Positions 3,001 through 32,542 of a stretch of DNA of 64,000 nucleotides are shown here, one piece after another. Origin of the DNA: Setoptus koraiensis (taxonomy: Eukaryota > Animalia > Arthropoda); contig CM106586.1 in NCBI GenBank assembly GCA_048013815.1, forward strand, positions 4,216,001 to 4,280,000, read 5' to 3'. The first letter of the stretch is position 1. Every line of letters starts with the position of its first letter. The position numbers and the translations under genes are program-made. The notes beneath the pieces are model-generated. The model was not told the DNA's origin. It ran no database searches and worked only from the letters and a program-made list of their open reading frames with translations.

Positions 3001-4354
3001 AATTGTTTTGATTTTTTGTTTGACAGTTGCAATCTATGTTGGTTAGCTGCTGTTGTTATTGTATTGTCGTCATTGGTTGGTGACAATGAATCGTTAGTAT
3101 AAGTAGTAGTGACAGACGACATCCTTTTCTTGTTTGCATAGTAGTTTGGTGCATAGTTGAAAAAACTAACAGCAACAATTATGAAGACAAGATAGACACA
3201 TTTGACAGACAGATTGTGTGTGGATGGAAAGACATAAGTTTGAGTAATATATACTAGCGAAGCTATTCTATTTTGGCTAGAGCAATTGAGAAAGTACTCT
3301 GAATATTGAAAAAGGAAACCAGTCTGGACAACATAAAGGGATAGCATTCACGGGTCAGGCGGAGGCTTGGATCAATTATGAAATATGGGACTAGAGAGAA
3401 ACAAATTGATAACAATAATCCATTAGATACTTACTCGGCCGAAGCAGAATGATGCAAGGTTCGATTAGTTCGTGGCCTGCTACTCAAACTGTCCACTTGG
3501 TCGGGCAAGCGACCAACGGAACTTGGTGTGGTAGCCTGGTTACTCTGGTGATGGTGACGATTGTTGGCGGTTGAATATTTAATTGACATTAACGGCGACA
3601 ATCCTCCTAGCGGCGATCCAATCTTGTTCAATACAACCGCCGTTCCGATACCCCGGCCAACTAGTTTGCGGCCTTCGAAATCAAACGACAACTGGTAACC
3701 AATGACTGCGTTGCCGCCATAAATCTCCGCCTTGAGGCCCAGTTTTCGTTGAACTTCTCCACCGAGCTTAGTGAAAAGTGTCTGTCTGGCCTCATTCGAT
3801 GCTCTAGGTGTGCGTATTTTGTCGATCCATTGATATTCGGGATCATCGTTGACTAGCAGTTCGTCTACGAAGCCCAATATTGCGTCGCATCTGTAACCGT
3901 TTGGTATGTCGGAAAAGAAGAACCTAACACCGCAAGATGATTGCCTGTATCGATTGTTGTCGGCAAACAAATTCACTTTTACCACACAATTTATTTCACC
4001 TCTAATTCCGTGTAATGTGTCATAAATGGGCAACCAACCGCTCATGGAATGGCCATAATTAGTGAGCAAAGGATTGAGATTGATGTAGACCTTGCCAATT
4101 GCATCGTTAGCCGAATAGGTGTCGTAGTCCATGATTCGTATTTGTAGTGGTTCGTCTTGGAGCTCTAAATCGCTCACCTCAAATCTGAACCATTCGCTGT
4201 TCCAGAATGGATTTAGCGATCTACGATACACCTCTGTCTTGTAGGTCGTATTGCCCAGTTTGACCTCAACAAACGCATCGCTGGCATCGCTTGATTTATC
4301 CATGACCGGCAAGTTTCTGCCAGCCAATATTCTAACTTTTACCTTGGCGGGCAT
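1..4354 (-). CDS. C2CD5: C2 domain-containing protein 5 (partial; exons 4354..3435 and 3165..<1, open past the window edge)
   Basis: N-terminus MPAKVKVRILAGRNLPVMDKSSDASDAFVEVK...DEPLQIRIMDYDTYSANDAIGKV is the C2CD5 C2 domain. Donor GA|gtaagt at 3434 and acceptor ctgttag|t at 3166 are phase-compatible. Hand translation of 3165..1 has no stop and contains the C2CD5 blocks EYPFVTIKKYPDGMIQSIGGVVSVHSVKLL, RDTWWTEIRKEIKSHAK and LPFLEYELHRQLLSKLK. The ORF track misses this exon because it has no stop in the window. Confidence 0.93.
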
Positions 4355-26620: not shown

Positions 26621-27764
26621 CACGGAGCATCATCAATGGCACAAAAGTGGAATAGAAAGCGTGCGGACAACAATGCTCATGTCGGCCAACCAGAGAGGGA
26701 CGGGTCAAGGGCTGTCGTCGGTGCACGCTGTTGTTGCTGGTCAATAGATGGAACGGATAAAAGCGAAGGCGAGATAAAAGTCAACAAGAGCCACTGTCAC
26801 GCTTCTTTTGCAACGTGATCTATTTTTAGCAATCATTAAAACTCGCCCGCTCGCTCTCTCACTTGAAAAAGCGATCGCAGGCTGACCAGTAGCGTTTATT
26901 TCGGGACGAATAGACTTGAAGAATGCACCACAATGTGTGCCGGCACACATACAATTATAGGCCGGCAGCATCCAGCCACAATTGTCGCCGAAGTGTTGCG
27001 AAAAGAGTTGACTTGGCCCCGTCCAGCCTTGCTCGCCGTTGAGTTACCTGAAATCGGTTGAATTTGGAGCTTCTCGGCACTATGCAAATATGGTGCCAGT
27101 ATTCAGGTATATGGTGGCAGCACGGGGGAGGCACTCGTTGGAAGCGTCAAACGTTGTACAGTAGTTGCTGTTGTTGTTGTTGTCGTCGTGGTTGTTGTTG
27201 TCGTCGTGGTCGCTGTTGTTGTTGTTGCTGTTGCTGTTGCTGCTGTTTTCGCTGTTATATAGCCGTATATAGGGTAATGGCGCATGCGCGCTACTTATCC
27301 ATGTCGAGAATCATTCGAGGCAGAGGCCAGAGTGCGATTCCGAACTGGCTTTTGCCACAACAGCATGTACACACACACACACACACTCACACACACATAC
27401 ACACACACACACGCACACACACACACACACACACACTCTGTTAGAACACACATATACAGGTTTGTTTGCAGAGAGTTACGATATACAATTGCCAATCTAT
27501 CGTGTTTGTGTGCCGAAAGAATTCGCAGCTCTAAGAGATCGTCAATTGAGCTCACCGTCGACAAGCCATTGAGAGAGACCATTGAGATGGCAACAGCAAT
27601 CGCAACAACGGCAACAACAACAGCAACTGCAACAATATCATCGAATTCAAGACGACGCATCGAAACAATAGACGAACCACAACAACGACAACACAACCAG
27701 CGAGCAATCTCGAGCAAATGCACTCGTGCAAACTATGAAACACACCAATCAAATCACCTGTAGA

Positions 27765-29474
27765 ATGACCACTATGTGCGCCGGATGTGACCGGCCCATC
27801 AATGACAAATTCATATACTCTGTTATAGATAGATCCTGGCACGAGGATTGTGTTCAATGTGTCGATTGTTCATCGCGTCTCAAAGATAAGTGTTTTGCGC
27901 GAGAGGGCAAGATATACTGTCGCGACCACTACTACAGGTAAGCATCATACTATCACAAGCTTTATTATTATTATCGTTGGCATTGCATCATACGATTCCA
28001 CCACAAACAATCTAAATAATAATATAAATCATAGTAATCTAAATAATATTATCGCAGCAGTCATCTCACCAAGAGGCCACTAACACTTCTTTCACACTAT
28101 ACCTACCCCTGTCTCTCTCTCTCTCTCCATATATCGTCTTGTATGAATGTCGTCATCTATATCGTCACCCCTGCAAATACTATTGACTACCCATTCAATC
28201 TGTTCGTTCAGAAGTTTCGGCCCAAAATGCTCCAAGTGCTGCCAAGGAATTGGACCCAGCGACCTTGTGCAACGAATCAAAGATAGTATTTTTCATTTAC
28301 ATTGTTTTATTTGTTCTTTTTGCCAGAAGCTTCTATCAACCGGCGAACAATTGTACCTGATTGACAACAACAAATTTGTATGCAAGGAAGACTATATGAA
28401 GCAACAACAGTTGCACCAACAACAACAACAACAACAACCGCCTCAATCGCGACAACAGCAGCTTAAACTAAAACTTCAACCACAACCACAATCTCAACCT
28501 CAATCACCCACACAACAACAACTGCAGCAAGCCAAACAACCTGCAACAACACAATTACAACCACAAAAACCTCCATCTTTGGCCTCGCCACAAGCCCAAG
28601 CTACAGCAAATCCAGCGGTACAATTGCAAACGCAAGCCCAGTTAACCCAGTTGCATTATGACACCACATTAGCTAATAATTCAAATAATTCAATTACAAC
28701 TCTCACAACAACCACACCACCAAGATCTCAATATTCATACCCTGAACAAATGTTTCCACAATATATAGAACAACAACAGCAATCTATGTCATCGGTTCCA
28801 AACAATTGTGCCAGCGACGACGACGCCTGTTCACCTTTATCTAGTATCATAGGTAGCTCCCGATCACATGCCAATAGTATTTGTCACAGTGATTTTGGTG
28901 GTGCTGGCGGCAACGGCACAAGCAGCAACGGAACCAATGGTGGTTGCAACAACACCACCAGCACCAATGGTAGTTGTGGTGCTGGTCCTGGTGGTGGGCC
29001 TCAACCTGGTACCGGTGCAGGTTCTAATGGTGGAAACGAAACCAGTGGTGGTGCTTCTAATGACAATGGCAATAGTGGTGGAGTACTCACTAGGAATAAG
29101 AGAATGCGTACCTCATTTAAATACCACCAATTGAAAACCATGAAACAGTGGTTTGCAAAAAATCAGAATCCCGATTCAAAAGATCTCAAGCAGCTTGCAG
29201 CGGCGACAGGACTTTCCAAACGAGTTCTTCAGGTAAGACGACAACAACAAGCCTCCATTAATAGCAATTGAATAGCGACATTCTTAACAGTAAGAGATAA
29301 TTGTACTAACTACCTTCATCCTTCGCTTCTGTACAGGTTTGGTTCCAGAATGCAAGAGCAAAAGACCGTCGTAACAATCTACGTAATAGCCATCATTTTG
29401 ACCATCACAATCTACATGGTCAACAATCCCAATCATCTAGTTTGCTGAACAGTTGCTCGGCTTTACTACCTTAG
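27765..29474 (+). CDS. LIM-homeobox transcription factor, ~443 aa (exons 27765..27937, 28212..29232, 29337..29474); Lim1-type LIM domains with an Apterous-type homeodomain
   Basis: LIM1 is [12 protein letters not shown]...[11 protein letters not shown]...CRDHYYR and LIM2 is [14 protein letters not shown]...[11 protein letters not shown]...CKEDYM. The homeodomain is [45 protein letters not shown]|[12 protein letters not shown]. Both introns are GT-AG and in phase, and intron 2 has a TACTAAC branch point at 29304. AATAAA at 29569. The start codon is uncertain (27735, 27765 or 27774, or an unseen upstream exon). Confidence 0.93.
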
Positions 29475-29644
29475 ATGATTCACGCGATTCAATGTCGTGT
29501 AAATTAATATAGCCATATCAGGAACAACAATGAGAACAGAACAGCCAATCTATAAAGTGCAATCATTCAATAAAAAGTAATATTTTGTAAGTCACCATGT
29601 ATCTCACTCGGACAATAGTGTATGGAACATTTTAATTGGGTTAA

Positions 29645-30409
29645 TTAGCTTTTCTGCTGCTCTTCTTCTTTTTGTGTCTCTTCTTTCTGCGTCTCCTCTT
29701 TCTGTGCCTCTTCATTTTGCTCCTCTACTTTTTCCACTTCTTCTTTCTGCTCTGGCTGGCCATGCGACCCGTCGGATTTGTTGTTGTTCCCTTTATTCTT
29801 CTTCTGCAGATACTTTTCTTTCTTCTCTGCTTTCCTTTTGCCGTATGCATCCAGGTCCTCTTTTAGAAGTTCTCTATCTTTTAATTTTAAAAGTTGCATA
29901 TCCAATACTTTTTTTGCGTCCTCTTGTTTCTTGAAGACAGCCATAATGCAACCCTTAAAGGCTCTAGTTTTGAAATGTCGTCTCATAGATACAGACTCCA
30001 CCTCACCAAATCTTTCGCAAAACCTGTGTAGATCGTCGAACGTTGAATCCAATGGAAAGCCTGAAATGTGCAACGTGCGAGCCTTAAGCTCCTTCTTGAA
30101 TTCATCTATATCGGGCAATGGCTTGGTGCGTCTCACTTTGCTCTTACAAGAGCTTAATTCCAGAAAGCCTTCGGTACCATGATTCTCCAGTGACTTGGCT
30201 AGTTCTCCCGGATCTTCGGTTAGATTTTTCAATCGCTGGAATGTGAGTAATGTTGTTAATTTGATCCAGCCATCGTCTTTCTTGAATTCATCCAGTAGGA
30301 ATTTGTCGTTGACGACATTGACATCACTGAAGTAATATTCTAATTGATTAGCCACTTTAGATAGTTCGTTGTCTAGTTTCTGCTTCTTAGAAACCTTGTT
30401 GTCTTCCAT
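29645..30409 (-). CDS. SSB: La autoantigen-like protein (La motif + RRM1), 254 aa, intronless
   Basis: La motif QLEYYFSDVNVVNDKFL...DGWIKLTTLLTFQRL. RRM with RTLHISGFP (RNP2) and FKGCIMAVF (RNP1). Basic then acidic tail. Confidence 0.9.
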   Translation of the reverse strand: MEDNKVSKKQKLDNELSKVANQLEYYFSDVNVVNDKFLLDEFKKDDGWIKLTTLLTFQRLKNLTEDPGELAKSLENHGTEGFLELSSCKSKVRRTKPLPDIDEFKKELKARTLHISGFPLDSTFDDLHRFCERFGEVESVSMRRHFKTRAFKGCIMAVFKKQEDAKKVLDMQLLKLKDRELLKEDLDAYGKRKAEKKEKYLQKKNKGNNNKSDGSHGQPEQKEEVEKVEEQNEEAQKEETQKEETQKEEEQQKS

Positions 30410-30760
30410 GATGATATATGTATGTTGGAAATTTTATCTTAATTTATTTCAAACCAAACCATTCGGTTGCATATCGAGAGTGAAGAATGAACGAGCTCCA
30501 CATGGGCGAAATGGCCGACCCAAATCGGCGAAACGCACGCCGTTCATATTAATCGAGCGCCAAACTTAAATTTCAAAACAAATCTTATGTAAGGGAATTT
30601 CGTACAGTGCAAACAACCATTTCAACGCGGACCAATGACATTGCGTTAGAGAATAGTCCAACTATTTTTATATATTCATGTATTATTAATTATTATTATT
30701 ATTGTTATATTTATATTTATTATTGTTGAGTATTTATCTCGTCCATTCGAGCTTCTAATC
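30410..30760. promoter_or_regulatory. Putative bidirectional promoter between head-to-head La and RAD17
   Basis: Only 351 bp separate the two divergent start codons. No specific core element identified. Confidence 0.6.
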
Positions 30761-32542
30761 ATGGACACGGACAGTTTATGGATATCAAAACCTCCTGCAA
30801 CCAGGGAAGAGTTGGAACGCGTCGTCAGAAGAGAAAAGATTGATGCACTGGCCTCATGGCTCACAAAACATTTCACTTGTGATCAAAGAAGTTACATCGA
30901 GAAATCACCTATACTCATATTGAAAGGGGCCTCAGGGTGCGGCAAAACAACCACTCTAAGATTGCTGGCAAACGAAATAGGCATTCCGATTCAAGAGTAT
31001 CATGACACTGTCGACGATACAGCTGTTTTCACTGCAACCAAACAAATTAAGTCGGAGCCGACATCTTTTGATTTTGATAAAAGACAAGCCAACAAATTTG
31101 AGCAATTTGTTCTGAATAATCTCAAATTCCCCAATCTGTCCGCATTTAACCAGACGCCAAAGAACAATTCTACGGGCCACCCTTCAACCTCACAAACAAA
31201 GAAGCCTCAATCGAGTAGATTGTCGCCCACTCTCGGTGTGATTATACTTGTTGAAACCCCTATGAGTATTGTCAGATCTAGAAACGTACTCATTGAAACA
31301 ATGTTTCGTTTGAGGCAGCATATAAAACAGCTGTCTAGACGTATCAGGAGAAGAGCTGCCATAATATTTGAGACACTCGAAAATGAAGCCTATTTATTGT
31401 TGCCTGACAAGACTAAGCAACAGCTGCAAATTGATATTATTACTTTCAATCCAGTCACCAAAACAAATCTAGTGAAACTCATCAAAACGTTCATTGGCGA
31501 ACGTGTACTCGACAAAGAGCAAATCAACACAATTGTGAACCAATGCGACGGGGACGTTCGCTCTTGCATCAATTCGCTTCAGATTATGTTCCAGCATAAG
31601 TTTGATTTGAATGATATACAATTCGCTCATCCATCGAAAGCGAAAAGAATCAAGCATGATACGTCCTTGAATACAGCCATGCTCAAAGGAGAGAACCTAC
31701 ATGTTAACTTTTTTCATATTCTGGGAAAAATATTTTATCAGAAGCGCATATATCCAGATAATTCGTCTGGGCGTCAAATGGATTCAACAAGATACCGCCC
31801 ATTTGTCACATGTGGAGGTCAGGACGGCCAATCAATGAACTATAGGTCCATCGATCGACCTTATCCAACTGAAAATAGTTCGGAATCAATACGAGAAATG
31901 TTGGATGTCAGTCCAGATACCTTGATTTCATGGTTACATCATAACTACTCGGAATTCTGTGATTTCAGAGATATCTCTAAGGCGTCAACTTTCACTGAAA
32001 ATTTGAGTTGCGCTGACATGATCTCGCTCAACATGTGCCAATCAACTCAGTTCTTTGAATCTCAATATCTCAAATACATTTGTGATCAAATTCAATCCAT
32101 CATTGCCATCGAATCAACCACATATAGCCTCTATACTGACAATTCGAAAAAAGAAACTAGCAATAGTAGCAAGAAAAAGATTATTGTTAATGGGAGGACG
32201 GGGATAGTCAAATCTAGTGTGGACCATCAAAACAAGACTTTGAGTTTTGAAAAACCACCGTTTCACCTATTTAACAATCTACTAAAAAACTATGAATTTC
32301 TCGTAGAAAAATGTTCGATAGATCTCATGATGATTGACCGTAGAAAAGTTTACCTAGATTATATGCCTTATGGATTAGATCTTAATCATTCGCAAGCCTT
32401 CTTCCAGTCTTTTTGCGAAAAATATAATTCATTCAACTCTGCTAGATCAAATGATGAATATGAAAACTTAGATCACGAACTCAAGAATATTATAGATGAT
32501 TATAGTCACCAAGTGTCAGAGAATTTCATGAATGAAGAATAA
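30761..32542 (+). CDS. RAD17: Cell-cycle checkpoint clamp loader RAD17, 593 aa, intronless
   Basis: N-terminal W..K..P...EEL...R.KI motif, Walker A LILKGASGCGKTTT, Walker B-like IILVE, ITFNPVTKT, CDGDVRSCINSLQ, and FFHILGKIFYQKR. Confidence 0.92.
   Translation: MDTDSLWISKPPATREELERVVRREKIDALASWLTKHFTCDQRSYIEKSPILILKGASGCGKTTTLRLLANEIGIPIQEYHDTVDDTAVFTATKQIKSEPTSFDFDKRQANKFEQFVLNNLKFPNLSAFNQTPKNNSTGHPSTSQTKKPQSSRLSPTLGVIILVETPMSIVRSRNVLIETMFRLRQHIKQLSRRIRRRAAIIFETLENEAYLLLPDKTKQQLQIDIITFNPVTKTNLVKLIKTFIGERVLDKEQINTIVNQCDGDVRSCINSLQIMFQHKFDLNDIQFAHPSKAKRIKHDTSLNTAMLKGENLHVNFFHILGKIFYQKRIYPDNSSGRQMDSTRYRPFVTCGGQDGQSMNYRSIDRPYPTENSSESIREMLDVSPDTLISWLHHNYSEFCDFRDISKASTFTENLSCADMISLNMCQSTQFFESQYLKYICDQIQSIIAIESTTYSLYTDNSKKETSNSSKKKIIVNGRTGIVKSSVDHQNKTLSFEKPPFHLFNNLLKNYEFLVEKCSIDLMMIDRRKVYLDYMPYGLDLNHSQAFFQSFCEKYNSFNSARSNDEYENLDHELKNIIDDYSHQVSENFMNEE

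What the first reader, a model, noticed from the sequence alone, without database searches (positions are those of the whole stretch)
27765..29474. Apparent chimeric LIM-homeobox gene: Lim1 (Lhx1/5) LIM domains fused to an Apterous (Lhx2/9) homeodomain
Seen: LIM2 contains QGIGPSDLV and [24 protein letters not shown]1 has the short [15 protein letters not shown] spacing, and the protein can start directly at LIM1 (MTTMCAGC). Established, recalled from memory: these are Lhx1/5/Lim1 signatures (QGI.PSDLV, LSTGE.LY..D.NKF.CK.DY); Lhx2/9/Apterous instead has LESELTCF and SASEMVMRA...TGDHFG. The homeodomain [31 protein letters not shown]...[13 protein letters not shown] is Apterous-type and unlike Lhx1/5 (RGPRTTIKAKQLETLK...NRRSK). 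LIM-HD classes normally have concordant LIM and homeodomain identities. LIM2 and most of the homeodomain lie in one continuous exon (28212..29232), joined by a Q/S/G-rich linker. Inference: recombination or domain swap between paralogues produced a factor with Lim1-type cofactor contacts and Apterous-type DNA recognition. The acidic residue after NARAK (KDRR) also resembles Lhx1/3/Isl rather than the aromatic residue of Apterous.
Basis: partly seen in the sequence, partly recalled or inferred. Interest (0 to 1): 0.88.

Follow-up and report, generated by a model that had tools for sequence, protein, structure and literature searches.

The report
Natural Lim1–Apterous hybrid LIM-homeobox gene
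The window holds an intact developmental transcription-factor gene whose two protein-binding LIM domains descend from the Lim1 (Lhx1/5) class and whose DNA-binding homeodomain descends from the Apterous (Lhx2/9) class; the same hybrid occurs in at least two other mites, so it is an old, selected domain swap and not an artefact.

Summary
A three-exon gene with GT-AG introns (27735-27937, 28212-29232, 29337-29474, + strand; 453 aa) encodes LIM1, LIM2, a Q/S/G-rich linker and a homeodomain.

- **Assembly:** two independent short-read assemblies carry the whole gene on single contigs with 0-1 differences, so there is no misjoin in the CAA-rich linker.
- **LIM pair:** it falls inside the Lhx1/5 clade (support 97-100/95-96). 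It scores 183 bits against a Lim1 class profile, against 130 for Apterous.
- **Homeodomain:** it scores 120 bits against Apterous and 58 against Lim1. At 24 class-discriminating columns it has 16 Apterous states and 0 Lim1 states.
- **Other species:** the same architecture occurs in the eriophyoid mite Fragariocoptes setiger (KAG9510506.1, annotated "Lhx5") and the spider mite Panonychus citri (XP_053210763.1). The window is therefore probably from an eriophyoid or related acariform mite.
- **Selection:** between the window and Fragariocoptes, synonymous sites are saturated (pS about 0.9) and pN is 0.1-0.27. All three domains are under purifying selection.
- **Spider mites:** the P. citri hybrid sits at the same locus as a Tetranychus urticae gene with Apterous-type LIMs. 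The LIM module was therefore exchanged more than once.

Caveats: AU tests are only marginal (p 0.04-0.15), no RNA data were found, and Lmx LIM references were not available. I found no paper describing this. An earlier scan note flags a second "Lim1-LIM" hybrid in this genome; I did not test it.

The parts
27735..27937 (+). Exon 1: start codon (a second in-frame ATG lies at 27765) and LIM1. LIM1 is of Lhx1/5 type with the short spacing, and its eighth zinc ligand is His (CRDH).
   Evidence: Pfam LIM, E 1.3e-15; the LIM1 half scores 98.4 bits against Lim1 and 72.3 against Ap; phmmer gives 87 bits to Lim1; one search gives 74 to Lhx4.
27938..28211 (+). Intron 1 (GT...AG, phase 2, splitting the Arg codon between LIM1 and LIM2).
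   Evidence: The same position and phase occur in Fragariocoptes L001 and P. citri L003. Canonical mite Apterous genes and an ostracod Lim1 gene also have an intron at this position, so it is not class-diagnostic.
28212..29232 (+). Exon 2. It holds LIM2 (about 28225-28398, Lhx1/5 type), a roughly 230-aa Q/S/G/N-rich CAA-rich linker (28399-29094), and homeodomain residues 1-46 (29095-29232, Apterous type).
   Evidence: the LIM2 half scores 107.8 bits against Lim1 and 72.2 against Ap; the only solved-structure match at E<=1e-6 is the Lhx9 homeodomain; the nearest Atlas cluster is 'Apterous a'; the exon is contiguous in two independent assemblies.
29233..29336 (+). Intron 2 (GT...AG, phase 0, between homeodomain residues 46 and 47, VLQ|VWF).
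   Evidence: The same position occurs in L001, L002, L003, Oppiella Apterous and ostracod Lim1.
29337..29474 (+). Exon 3: the end of homeodomain helix 3 ([12 protein letters not shown]), a 33-aa tail and the TAG stop.
29569..29574 (+). AATAAA polyadenylation-signal-like hexamer 95 nt after the stop codon.
   Evidence: Read directly. Function is inferred.

Best explanation
The locus is a functional LIM-homeodomain transcription-factor gene of mosaic ancestry.

**What is shown**
- Its LIM1-LIM2 module descends from an Lhx1/5 (Lim1) gene.
- Its homeodomain descends from an Lhx2/9 (Apterous) gene.
- The junction lies in the linker between LIM2 and the homeodomain.
- The hybrid is older than the split between the window's species and the eriophyoid mite Fragariocoptes setiger.
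- A hybrid of the same kind occupies an apterous-like locus in the spider mite Panonychus citri.
- All three domains are kept by purifying selection.

**What is inferred (origin)**
The 5' LIM exons of an apterous paralogue were replaced by those of Lim1. The route could be non-allelic recombination, exon shuffling through the intron that follows LIM2, or gene conversion. That intron is still present in P. citri and in an ostracod Lim1 gene. It was later lost in intron-poor eriophyoids, which would have put LIM2, linker and homeodomain into one exon.

**What is inferred (function)**
The protein should bind Apterous-type DNA sites, because its recognition helix is identical to Apterous up to residue 55. 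Its LIM pair should recruit Chip/Ldb and other partners in the manner of Lim1.
For: - **Gene integrity:** the ORF is intact, the splice sites are canonical, and Pfam finds LIM, LIM and a homeodomain.
- **No misjoin:** two independent assemblies carry 27447-30500 on single contigs.
- **LIM class, trees:** the LIM pair falls inside Lhx1/5 at 97/95*, 99/95* and 100/96*. The Apterous clade excludes it at 98/90* and 99/90*.
- **LIM class, profiles:** Lim1 beats Ap by 53 bits, and both halves agree. Of 21 discriminating columns, 12 carry the Lim1 state and 3 the Ap state.
- **Lhx3/4 and Islet are poorer matches:** Lhx4 gives 74 and 78 bits and Isl1 gives 52 and 44, against 87 and 90-97 for Lim1.
- **Homeodomain class:** Ap beats Lim1 by 62 bits and Awh by 37. 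Of 24 discriminating columns, 16 carry the Ap state and 0 the Lim1 state. It is 75-85% identical to Ap homeodomains. The only PDB match is Lhx9, and the nearest Atlas cluster is 'Apterous a'.
- **Conservation of the architecture:** P0075 (Fragariocoptes) and P0082 (P. citri) have the same class pattern and the same two intron positions.
- **Selection, window against Fragariocoptes:** pS is 0.88-1.26 (saturated) and pN is 0.09-0.27 in LIM1, LIM2 and the homeodomain.
- **Junction:** the P. citri hybrid keeps the Apterous linker motif GRPR[KR], which is found in 29 of 34 Ap, 0 of 14 Lim1 and 0 of 8 Awh proteins.
- **Specificity of the pattern:** every metagenome locus that carries both domains is class-concordant, so the discordance is not an artefact of the method.
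Against: - AU tests are weak. Forcing the hybrids into the Apterous clade for the LIM pair costs 21-22 lnL, but p is only 0.044 and 0.06. Forcing them into Lhx1/5 for the homeodomain costs 20.8 lnL with p 0.15.
- Only three of the six LIM-homeodomain classes were in the trees. Lhx3/4 and Islet were compared only through solved structures. Lmx LIM domains were not tested.
- In the LIM1 half the discriminating columns are mixed: 4 Lim1 states, 3 Ap states and 3 other of 10.
- The two-residue LIM1 deletion also occurs in two Apterous-type proteins, Armadillidium P0008 and T. urticae P0043.
- No RNA run was found, so splicing and expression are inferred.
- No microsynteny with the Fragariocoptes locus was seen.
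- The window and Fragariocoptes proteins lack the Apterous linker motif.
Confidence: 0.85

Rival explanations
1. The gene is a fast-evolving but ordinary apterous orthologue. Its LIM domains drifted or converged towards Lim1-like residues, and no DNA was exchanged between paralogues.
For: - The LIM domains are only 56-65% identical to canonical Lim1, whereas true Lim1 orthologues are far more alike.
- The hybrids sit on long branches.
- The LIM1 deletion is homoplastic.
- The AU test does not firmly reject placing the hybrids with Apterous (p 0.044 and 0.06).
- The LIM1-half columns are mixed.
Against: - The Lim1 class profile wins by 53 bits, and both LIM halves agree.
- In the LIM2 half, 8 columns carry the Lim1 state and 0 the Ap state.
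- The hybrids fall inside Lhx1/5 with 97-100% bootstrap in three taxon sets.
- Three species show the same pattern. The fast-evolving T. urticae Apterous-type LIM pair still scores as Ap, with 0 Lim1 states.
Confidence: 0.08
2. The hybrid is an assembly or annotation artefact: a misjoin inside the CAA-rich linker between a Lim1 gene and an apterous gene.
For: The linker is low-complexity and CAA-rich. A nearby CAA repeat (27591-27635) collects thousands of unrelated contigs.
Against: - Single contigs from two studies span 27447-30500 with 0-1 differences.
- LIM2, linker and homeodomain form one open reading frame.
- The same architecture is present in independently assembled genomes of two other mites.
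Confidence: 0.01
3. The gene is a decaying or non-functional duplicate: a recent chimeric pseudogene or a transcriptionally silent relic.
For: - No RNA run holding the gene was found.
- The protein lacks the conserved Apterous linker and C-terminal motifs.
- The homeodomain has 8 'other' states at the 24 discriminating columns.
Against: - There is no stop codon or frameshift.
- All zinc ligands and the homeodomain recognition helix are intact.
- pN is 0.09-0.27 while pS is saturated against Fragariocoptes.
- Both intron positions are conserved.
Confidence: 0.05

Closest known systems
Apterous / Lhx2 / Lhx9 class LIM-homeodomain proteins (for example Drosophila ap, P0247; Oppiella nova P0286; Blomia tropicalis P0266)
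   Same: - The homeodomain is 75-85% identical, and the recognition helix is identical through NARAK.
- The homeodomain intron lies at position 46/47.
- In spider mites the hybrid sits in a tandem pair of apterous-like genes.
   Different: - Both LIM domains belong to another class.
- The GRPR[KR] linker motif and the C-terminal ...ELY/ELF motif are absent.
- Asp replaces Trp/Phe after NARAK.
Lim1 / Lhx1 / Lhx5 class (for example Dermatophagoides pteronyssinus Lhx1-like P0334; Parasteatoda Lhx5 P0098; Neanthes Lim1 P0206)
   Same: - The LIM1 spacing is the short form.
- The LIM2 motifs QGI.P.DLV and LSTGE.LY..D.NKF.CKEDY are shared.
- The LIM pair groups inside this clade.
   Different: - The homeodomain shares 0 of 24 class-specific states with Lim1.
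- The LIM domains are only about 60% identical to canonical Lim1.
KAG9510506.1 'LIM/homeobox protein Lhx5, partial' of Fragariocoptes setiger (P0075) and XP_053210763.1 'uncharacterized membrane protein DDB_G0293934-like' of Panonychus citri (P0082)
   Same: Both have the same hybrid architecture and the same intron positions. P0075 is the nearest relative in the LIM tree.
   Different: - The linkers cannot be aligned.
- P0082 keeps an Apterous linker motif and an intron after LIM2.
- The P0082 LIM pair does not group with the eriophyoid pair in the best tree. One clade for all three is not rejected (p 0.11).
- Neither database name reflects the hybrid nature.
Engineered LIM-domain swaps between LIM-homeodomain proteins in Drosophila (from my own knowledge of the 1990s literature; not retrieved here)
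   Same: Those constructs also combine the LIM pair of one class with the homeodomain of another.
   Different: They are laboratory constructs. This is a naturally evolved, conserved gene.

Membership tests
[quoted passage not shown] | Two tandem N-terminal LIM zinc-finger domains followed by a homeodomain in one polypeptide | tested here: met
   Pfam finds LIM (1.3e-15), LIM (6e-14) and a homeodomain (3.9e-09 plus the terminal 12 positions). All eight zinc ligands of each LIM domain can be read in the alignment.
Lhx1/5 (Lim1) class | LIM1-LIM2 pair of Lhx1/5 type | tested here: met
   Tree support is 97/95*, 99/95* and 100/96*. The class profile scores 183.5 bits against 130.3 for Ap. The AU test is only marginal.
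Lhx1/5 (Lim1) class | Homeodomain of Lhx1/5 type (RGPRTTIKAKQLETLK...NRRSKERR) | tested here: not met
   0 of 24 Lim1-specific states. 57.7 bits against 119.6 for Ap.
Lhx2/9 (Apterous) class | Homeodomain of Apterous type | tested here: met
   16 Ap states and 0 Lim1 states of 24. 75-85% identity. The only PDB match is the Lhx9 homeodomain. The nearest Atlas cluster is 'Apterous a'.
Lhx2/9 (Apterous) class | LIM1-LIM2 pair of Apterous type (two extra residues in LIM1, LVMRA in LIM2, GD.FG) | tested here: not met
   3 Ap states against 12 Lim1 states of 21 columns. The starred Apterous clade excludes it.
Lhx2/9 (Apterous) class | Basic GRPR[KR] motif in the linker before the homeodomain | tested here: not met
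   The motif is absent from the window protein. It is present in 29 of 34 Ap proteins, 0 of 14 Lim1 proteins and in the P. citri hybrid.
Lhx3/4 and Islet classes | LIM domains most similar to Lhx3/4 or Islet | tested here: not met
   phmmer bits for LIM1 and LIM2: Lhx4 74 and 78, Isl1 52 and 44, against Lim1 87 and 90-97. These are solved vertebrate chains only, and no tree was built.
Lmx class | LIM domains or homeodomain of Lmx type | not tested
The homeodomain's strong Apterous match makes an Lmx homeodomain unlikely. The LIM comparison remains open.

The most novel reading that the evidence does not exclude
In acariform mites the LIM1-LIM2 module of LIM-homeobox genes behaves as an exchangeable cassette.

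- Lim1-type LIM exons may have been installed independently at apterous-type loci in the eriophyoid lineage (window, Fragariocoptes) and in the Panonychus lineage.
- The positional orthologue in Tetranychus urticae carries Apterous-type LIMs in an intronless exon.
- The same genome as the window may hold a further Lim1-LIM/Islet-homeodomain hybrid (scan note s1-325855).
- It may also hold a LIM1 exon copy 80% identical in DNA to this one.

This would be a repeated natural rewiring of the 'LIM code'.
Probability: 0.3. Interest if true: 0.85.

Novelty: new variant of a known kind. Interest (0 to 1): 0.66.

Why it matters
The six LIM-homeodomain classes predate bilaterians. They are normally defined by LIM domains and homeodomains that tell the same phylogenetic story; the standard family phylogeny concatenates them (PMC2828406). 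In these proteins the LIM pair decides which cofactors and partner factors are bound, and the homeodomain decides which genes are targeted.

A naturally evolved, conserved protein that joins the Lim1 partner-binding module to the Apterous DNA-binding module is a ready-made evolutionary experiment on how separable the two functions are. It also shows how a developmental regulatory code can be rewired in miniaturised, gene-poor animals.

There is a practical point as well. Public annotations call one orthologue 'Lhx5' and another an 'uncharacterized membrane protein'. Homeobox censuses based on one domain will therefore misclassify these genes.

Tried and rejected
- **LIM2-only word search:** it found only 2 candidates and gave nothing. 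One protein search was wasted.
- **RNA evidence:** no RNA run was found. All runs that hold the gene also hold its introns, so they are DNA.
- **Runs X7 and X8:** I took them for relatives. They hold short contigs identical to the window, so they are the same species at low depth.
- **Remnant exons:** I searched the 64-kb window for leftover Lim1 homeodomain or Apterous LIM exons. There are none, so this is not a local tandem fusion.
- **Microsynteny with Fragariocoptes:** the neighbours differ. The window has La, Rad17, a WD40 protein and UNC-50. Fragariocoptes has glutathione synthase and a lipase.
- **Intron positions as class markers:** the LIM1|LIM2 intron and the homeodomain 46/47 intron are shared by canonical Apterous and Lim1 genes, so they are uninformative.
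- **AU tests:** they are marginal, partly because the constraint can be met by placing the hybrids at the base of the rival clade.
- **Atlas look-up of the LIM2 part:** it returned only generic 'LIM domain' clusters.
- **Metagenome scan:** it found no further demonstrable hybrids. L013/L017/L020 have a window-like homeodomain, but their LIM exons lie outside the 3 kb fetched.
- **Locus retrieval:** the spider Lhx5 locus is too long to retrieve, and D. pteronyssinus Lim1 is not on record.
- **Literature:** five searches found no description of such a hybrid.
Full report
**1. What is in the sequence**

Reading 27300-30000 and assembling the frames gives a three-exon gene on the + strand.
- Exon 1 is 27735-27937, exon 2 is 28212-29232 and exon 3 is 29337-29474.
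- Both introns are GT...AG. The CDS is 1362 nt and encodes 453 aa.
The ORF opens at 27735.
- Pfam finds a LIM domain in exon 1 (E 1.3e-15). It finds a LIM domain (6e-14) and homeodomain positions 1-45 (3.9e-09) in exon 2, and homeodomain positions 46-57 in exon 3.
- An AATAAA lies 95 nt after the stop.
- tblastn and six-frame profile scans find no other LIM or homeodomain coding segment anywhere in the 64-kb window.
- The neighbours are La, Rad17, a WD40 protein, UNC-50 and an AMP-binding enzyme. Most are single-exon.

**2. It is not an assembly artefact**

Contigs of two public runs from different studies were laid on 27000-30500. X1 has a 7839-bp contig and X4 a 12452-bp contig. Each covers 27447-30500, from upstream of LIM1 to beyond the stop, with 1 and 0 differences and no gaps. 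The CAA-rich linker is therefore bridged independently. No RNA run was found, so splicing is inferred from the frames, the canonical splice sites and conservation.

**3. Class of each domain**

*Pairwise identity.* Named Lhx1 proteins are 56% (LIM1), 63-65% (LIM2) and 46-52% (homeodomain) identical to the window protein. Lhx2/9/Apterous proteins are 40-46%, 35-49% and 75-85%.

*LIM-pair tree.* I extracted the LIM pair (120 columns) and the homeodomain (61 columns) from about 60 named or looked-up proteins of three classes. In the LIM-pair tree the window protein lies inside the Lhx1/5 clade, with support 97/95*. The Apterous clade (98/90*) excludes it. After removing long-branch rows the values are 99/95* and 99/90*. 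With metagenome loci added the Lhx1/5 value is 100/96*.

*Homeodomain tree.* The window sequence sits among Apterous homeodomains, at path length 0.33 to chelicerate Apterous. The Lhx1/5 homeodomains sit behind a branch of 2.8 changes per column (94/90).

*Class profiles built without the tested rows.*

| Domain | Lim1 | Ap | Awh |
|---|---|---|---|
| LIM pair | 183.5 | 130.3 | 129.4 |
| LIM1 half | 98.4 | 72.3 | 59.6 |
| LIM2 half | 107.8 | 72.2 | 81.4 |
| Homeodomain | 57.7 | 119.6 | 82.9 |

*Discriminating columns.* These are columns where the Ap and Lim1 consensus residues differ. In the LIM pair, 12 carry the Lim1 state, 3 the Ap state and 6 another state, of 21. In the homeodomain, 16 carry the Ap state, 0 the Lim1 state and 8 another state, of 24.

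*Solved structures.* Lhx4 gives 74 bits (LIM1) and 78 bits (LIM2). Isl1 gives 52 and 44. Lim1 proteins give 87 and 90-97. The homeodomain matches only the Lhx9 homeodomain at E<=1e-6. The nearest Atlas cluster for the homeodomain part is 'Apterous a'.

*Weak points.*
- AU tests are marginal. Holding the hybrids with Apterous on the LIM alignment costs 22.3 and 21.3 lnL, with p 0.044 and 0.06.
- Holding them with Lhx1/5 on the homeodomain alignment costs 20.8 lnL, with p 0.15.
- Only three classes were in the trees, and Lmx LIM domains were not compared.
- The LIM1-half columns are mixed (4 Lim1, 3 Ap).
- The two-residue LIM1 deletion also occurs in two Apterous-type proteins.

**4. The same hybrid in other mites**

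The exhaustive representative search with exon 2, followed by per-domain comparison, found two proteins with the same combination.
- P0075 is KAG9510506.1 of the eriophyoid mite Fragariocoptes setiger, annotated 'Lhx5, partial'.
- P0082 is XP_053210763.1 of the spider mite Panonychus citri, annotated as an 'uncharacterized membrane protein'.
- Their class-profile scores and column counts mirror the window's: LIM pair 12-16 Lim1 states against 2-4 Ap, homeodomain 20-21 Ap states against 0-1 Lim1.
- In the Fragariocoptes locus the core gene has the window's structure: a LIM1 exon, a short intron at the same phase-2 position, one exon with LIM2, linker and homeodomain 1-46, the 46/47 intron, and a last exon.
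- The window protein and P0075 are sisters in the LIM tree (80/37 and 85/49). They share derived states such as His as the eighth LIM1 zinc ligand (CR[DE]H) and GIGP..DLVQR.
- Between the two, synonymous sites are saturated (pS 0.88-1.26) and pN is 0.09-0.27 in LIM1, LIM2 and the homeodomain. All three domains have been under purifying selection since their divergence.

Several things make an eriophyoid or related acariform mite the likely source of the window:
- the arthropod affinity of the La neighbour;
- the mostly single-exon neighbouring genes;
- a total of about 56 Mb of contigs in the holding runs, with traces in an air metagenome;
- the extreme intron loss described for an eriophyoid genome (PMC7738191).

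The organism itself was not identified.

**5. Where the junction lies and how it may have arisen**

- The linker motif GRPR[KR] occurs in 29 of 34 Apterous proteins and in none of 14 Lim1 or 8 Arrowhead proteins. The P. citri hybrid has it at residue 276. The window and Fragariocoptes proteins do not.
- P. citri also keeps an intron a few codons after LIM2. An ostracod Lim1 gene has an intron at a similar place.
- The simplest model, which is an inference, is that the LIM1 and LIM2 exons of Lim1 replaced those of an apterous paralogue. This could have happened by recombination in that intron or by gene conversion.
- Introns in the linker were then lost in eriophyoids.
- The LIM1|LIM2 and homeodomain 46/47 introns occur in canonical Apterous and Lim1 genes too, so they say nothing about class.

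**6. More than one exchange**

- The P. citri hybrid (L003) and the T. urticae 'Lhx9-like' gene P0043 (L002) are positional orthologues.
- The downstream DENN-domain gene is shared (up to 93% aa identity over 147 residues). Upstream non-coding blocks, intronic blocks, the homeodomain exon (93% aa) and the last exon are all collinear.
- Both loci have a second apterous-like gene upstream. It is degenerate in T. urticae.
- Yet T. urticae carries Apterous-type LIMs: 8 Ap states and 0 Lim1 states, 124 bits against 96. It groups with acariform Apterous at 100/96*. These LIMs lie in an intronless exon together with the linker and homeodomain 1-46.
- P. citri carries Lim1-type LIMs in separate exons.
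- So the LIM module was exchanged at this locus after, or in addition to, the event seen in eriophyoids.
- In the best LIM tree the eriophyoid hybrids group with a class-concordant Lim1 gene from a metagenome contig (L026, 95/86*, long branch). The P. citri hybrid groups with a LIM-only contig (L027, 100/96*) elsewhere in Lhx1/5.
- One clade for the three hybrids costs 9.4 lnL and is not rejected (p 0.11). Whether there was one origin or two stays open.
- All five metagenome loci that carry both domains are class-concordant. Discordance is therefore not something the method produces by default.

**7. Function (inferred)**

The recognition helix is identical to Apterous through NARAK, so Apterous-type DNA sites are expected. 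LIM-homeodomain proteins act in complexes in which an Ldb/Chip dimer bridges two LIM-homeodomain molecules (abstract of bioRxiv 10.1101/2020.08.24.265207). The LIM pair here should bind Chip/Ldb, and any class-specific partners, as Lim1 does. None of this was tested.

**8. The KDRR point**

The Asp after NARAK is real. Fragariocoptes has Phe and P. citri has Trp at that position, as in Apterous. It is a private substitution and not a sign that the junction lies inside the homeodomain.

**9. Novelty**

Five literature searches found no description of a natural inter-class LIM-homeodomain hybrid. They included the arachnid homeobox survey (PMC6107062) and the eriophyoid genome paper (PMC7738191). 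Database names of the orthologues do not reflect it. I class it as a new variant of a known kind.

Two earlier scan notes on the same genome bear on it but were not tested. Note s1-325855 reports 'Lim1-type LIMs joined to an Islet homeodomain'. Note s1-307648 reports a Lim1 gene whose last homeodomain exon was not found.

Noticed in passing
window 27810-27948 (run X4, record 14): Run X4 holds a 394-bp contig at similar depth (128.8 against 119) that matches the LIM1 exon with 27 differences in 139 nt (80.6% identity). The Fragariocoptes orthologue is only 64% identical over the same stretch. The 19 listed differences translate to HQDCVKCADCSTRLREKCFSREGII. This may be a paralogous LIM1 exon in the same genome, possibly its Lim1 gene, or a close relative in the sample. 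It was not seen in X1, perhaps because it lies at the 80% cut-off.
   Followed up: partly
L002 (T. urticae HE587326.1) and L003 (P. citri JAAABK010000139.1): Positional orthologues in two spider mites carry LIM pairs of different classes: Apterous-type and intronless in T. urticae, Lim1-type with introns in P. citri. Both have a second apterous-like gene upstream. In T. urticae that gene has stop codons in its homeodomain, and its last exon is duplicated downstream (L002 1671-1712 and 20112-20153).
   Followed up: partly
L013, L017, L020 (plant metagenome contigs up to 117 kb), HD at 3031-3171: These contigs carry an Apterous-type homeodomain with the window-like motif MKRWFSKNQNPD. A low-complexity ORF of more than 640 aa precedes it in the same exon. 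The LIM exons lie beyond the 3 kb fetched, so their class is unknown. This is probably a relative of the window's gene.
   Followed up: partly
L026 2833-3900 (metagenome contig Ga0209372_1000303, GC 62%): This is a class-concordant Lim1 gene (Lim1 LIMs plus Lim1 homeodomain, with no LIM1|LIM2 intron). Its LIM pair groups with the window and Fragariocoptes hybrids at 95/86* and shares FIFSVIE, H.ECV.CVDC and RFGPKCS.C. It is a possible relative of the donor lineage, but the branch is long and the organism unknown.
   Followed up: partly
window 27361-27446 and 27591-27635: A (CA)n microsatellite lies about 300 nt upstream of the start codon. A CAA/CAG repeat in the putative 5' leader attracts thousands of unrelated contigs (word depth up to about 115,000), which produces spurious 'joints' in the read-laying output.
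   Followed up: no
window 29645-30409 (-) and 30761-32542 (+): A single-exon La-domain/RRM protein gene ends tail-to-tail about 170 nt after the LIM-homeobox stop codon. A single-exon Rad17-like gene follows, then a WD40 gene, UNC-50 and an AMP-binding enzyme. This is a very compact, intron-poor neighbourhood.
   Followed up: partly
protein P0072 (397 aa, representative search): The best-scoring representative has two successive Lim1-type LIM pairs (four LIM domains) before a Lim1 homeodomain. It may be a tandem LIM-pair duplication or a fused gene model. The organism was not looked up.
   Followed up: no
protein P0008 (Armadillidium vulgare record flagged UNVERIFIED_CONTAM): This Apterous-class protein has the same two-residue LIM1 deletion as Lhx1/5. 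The indel is therefore homoplastic and cannot be used alone as a class marker.
   Followed up: no
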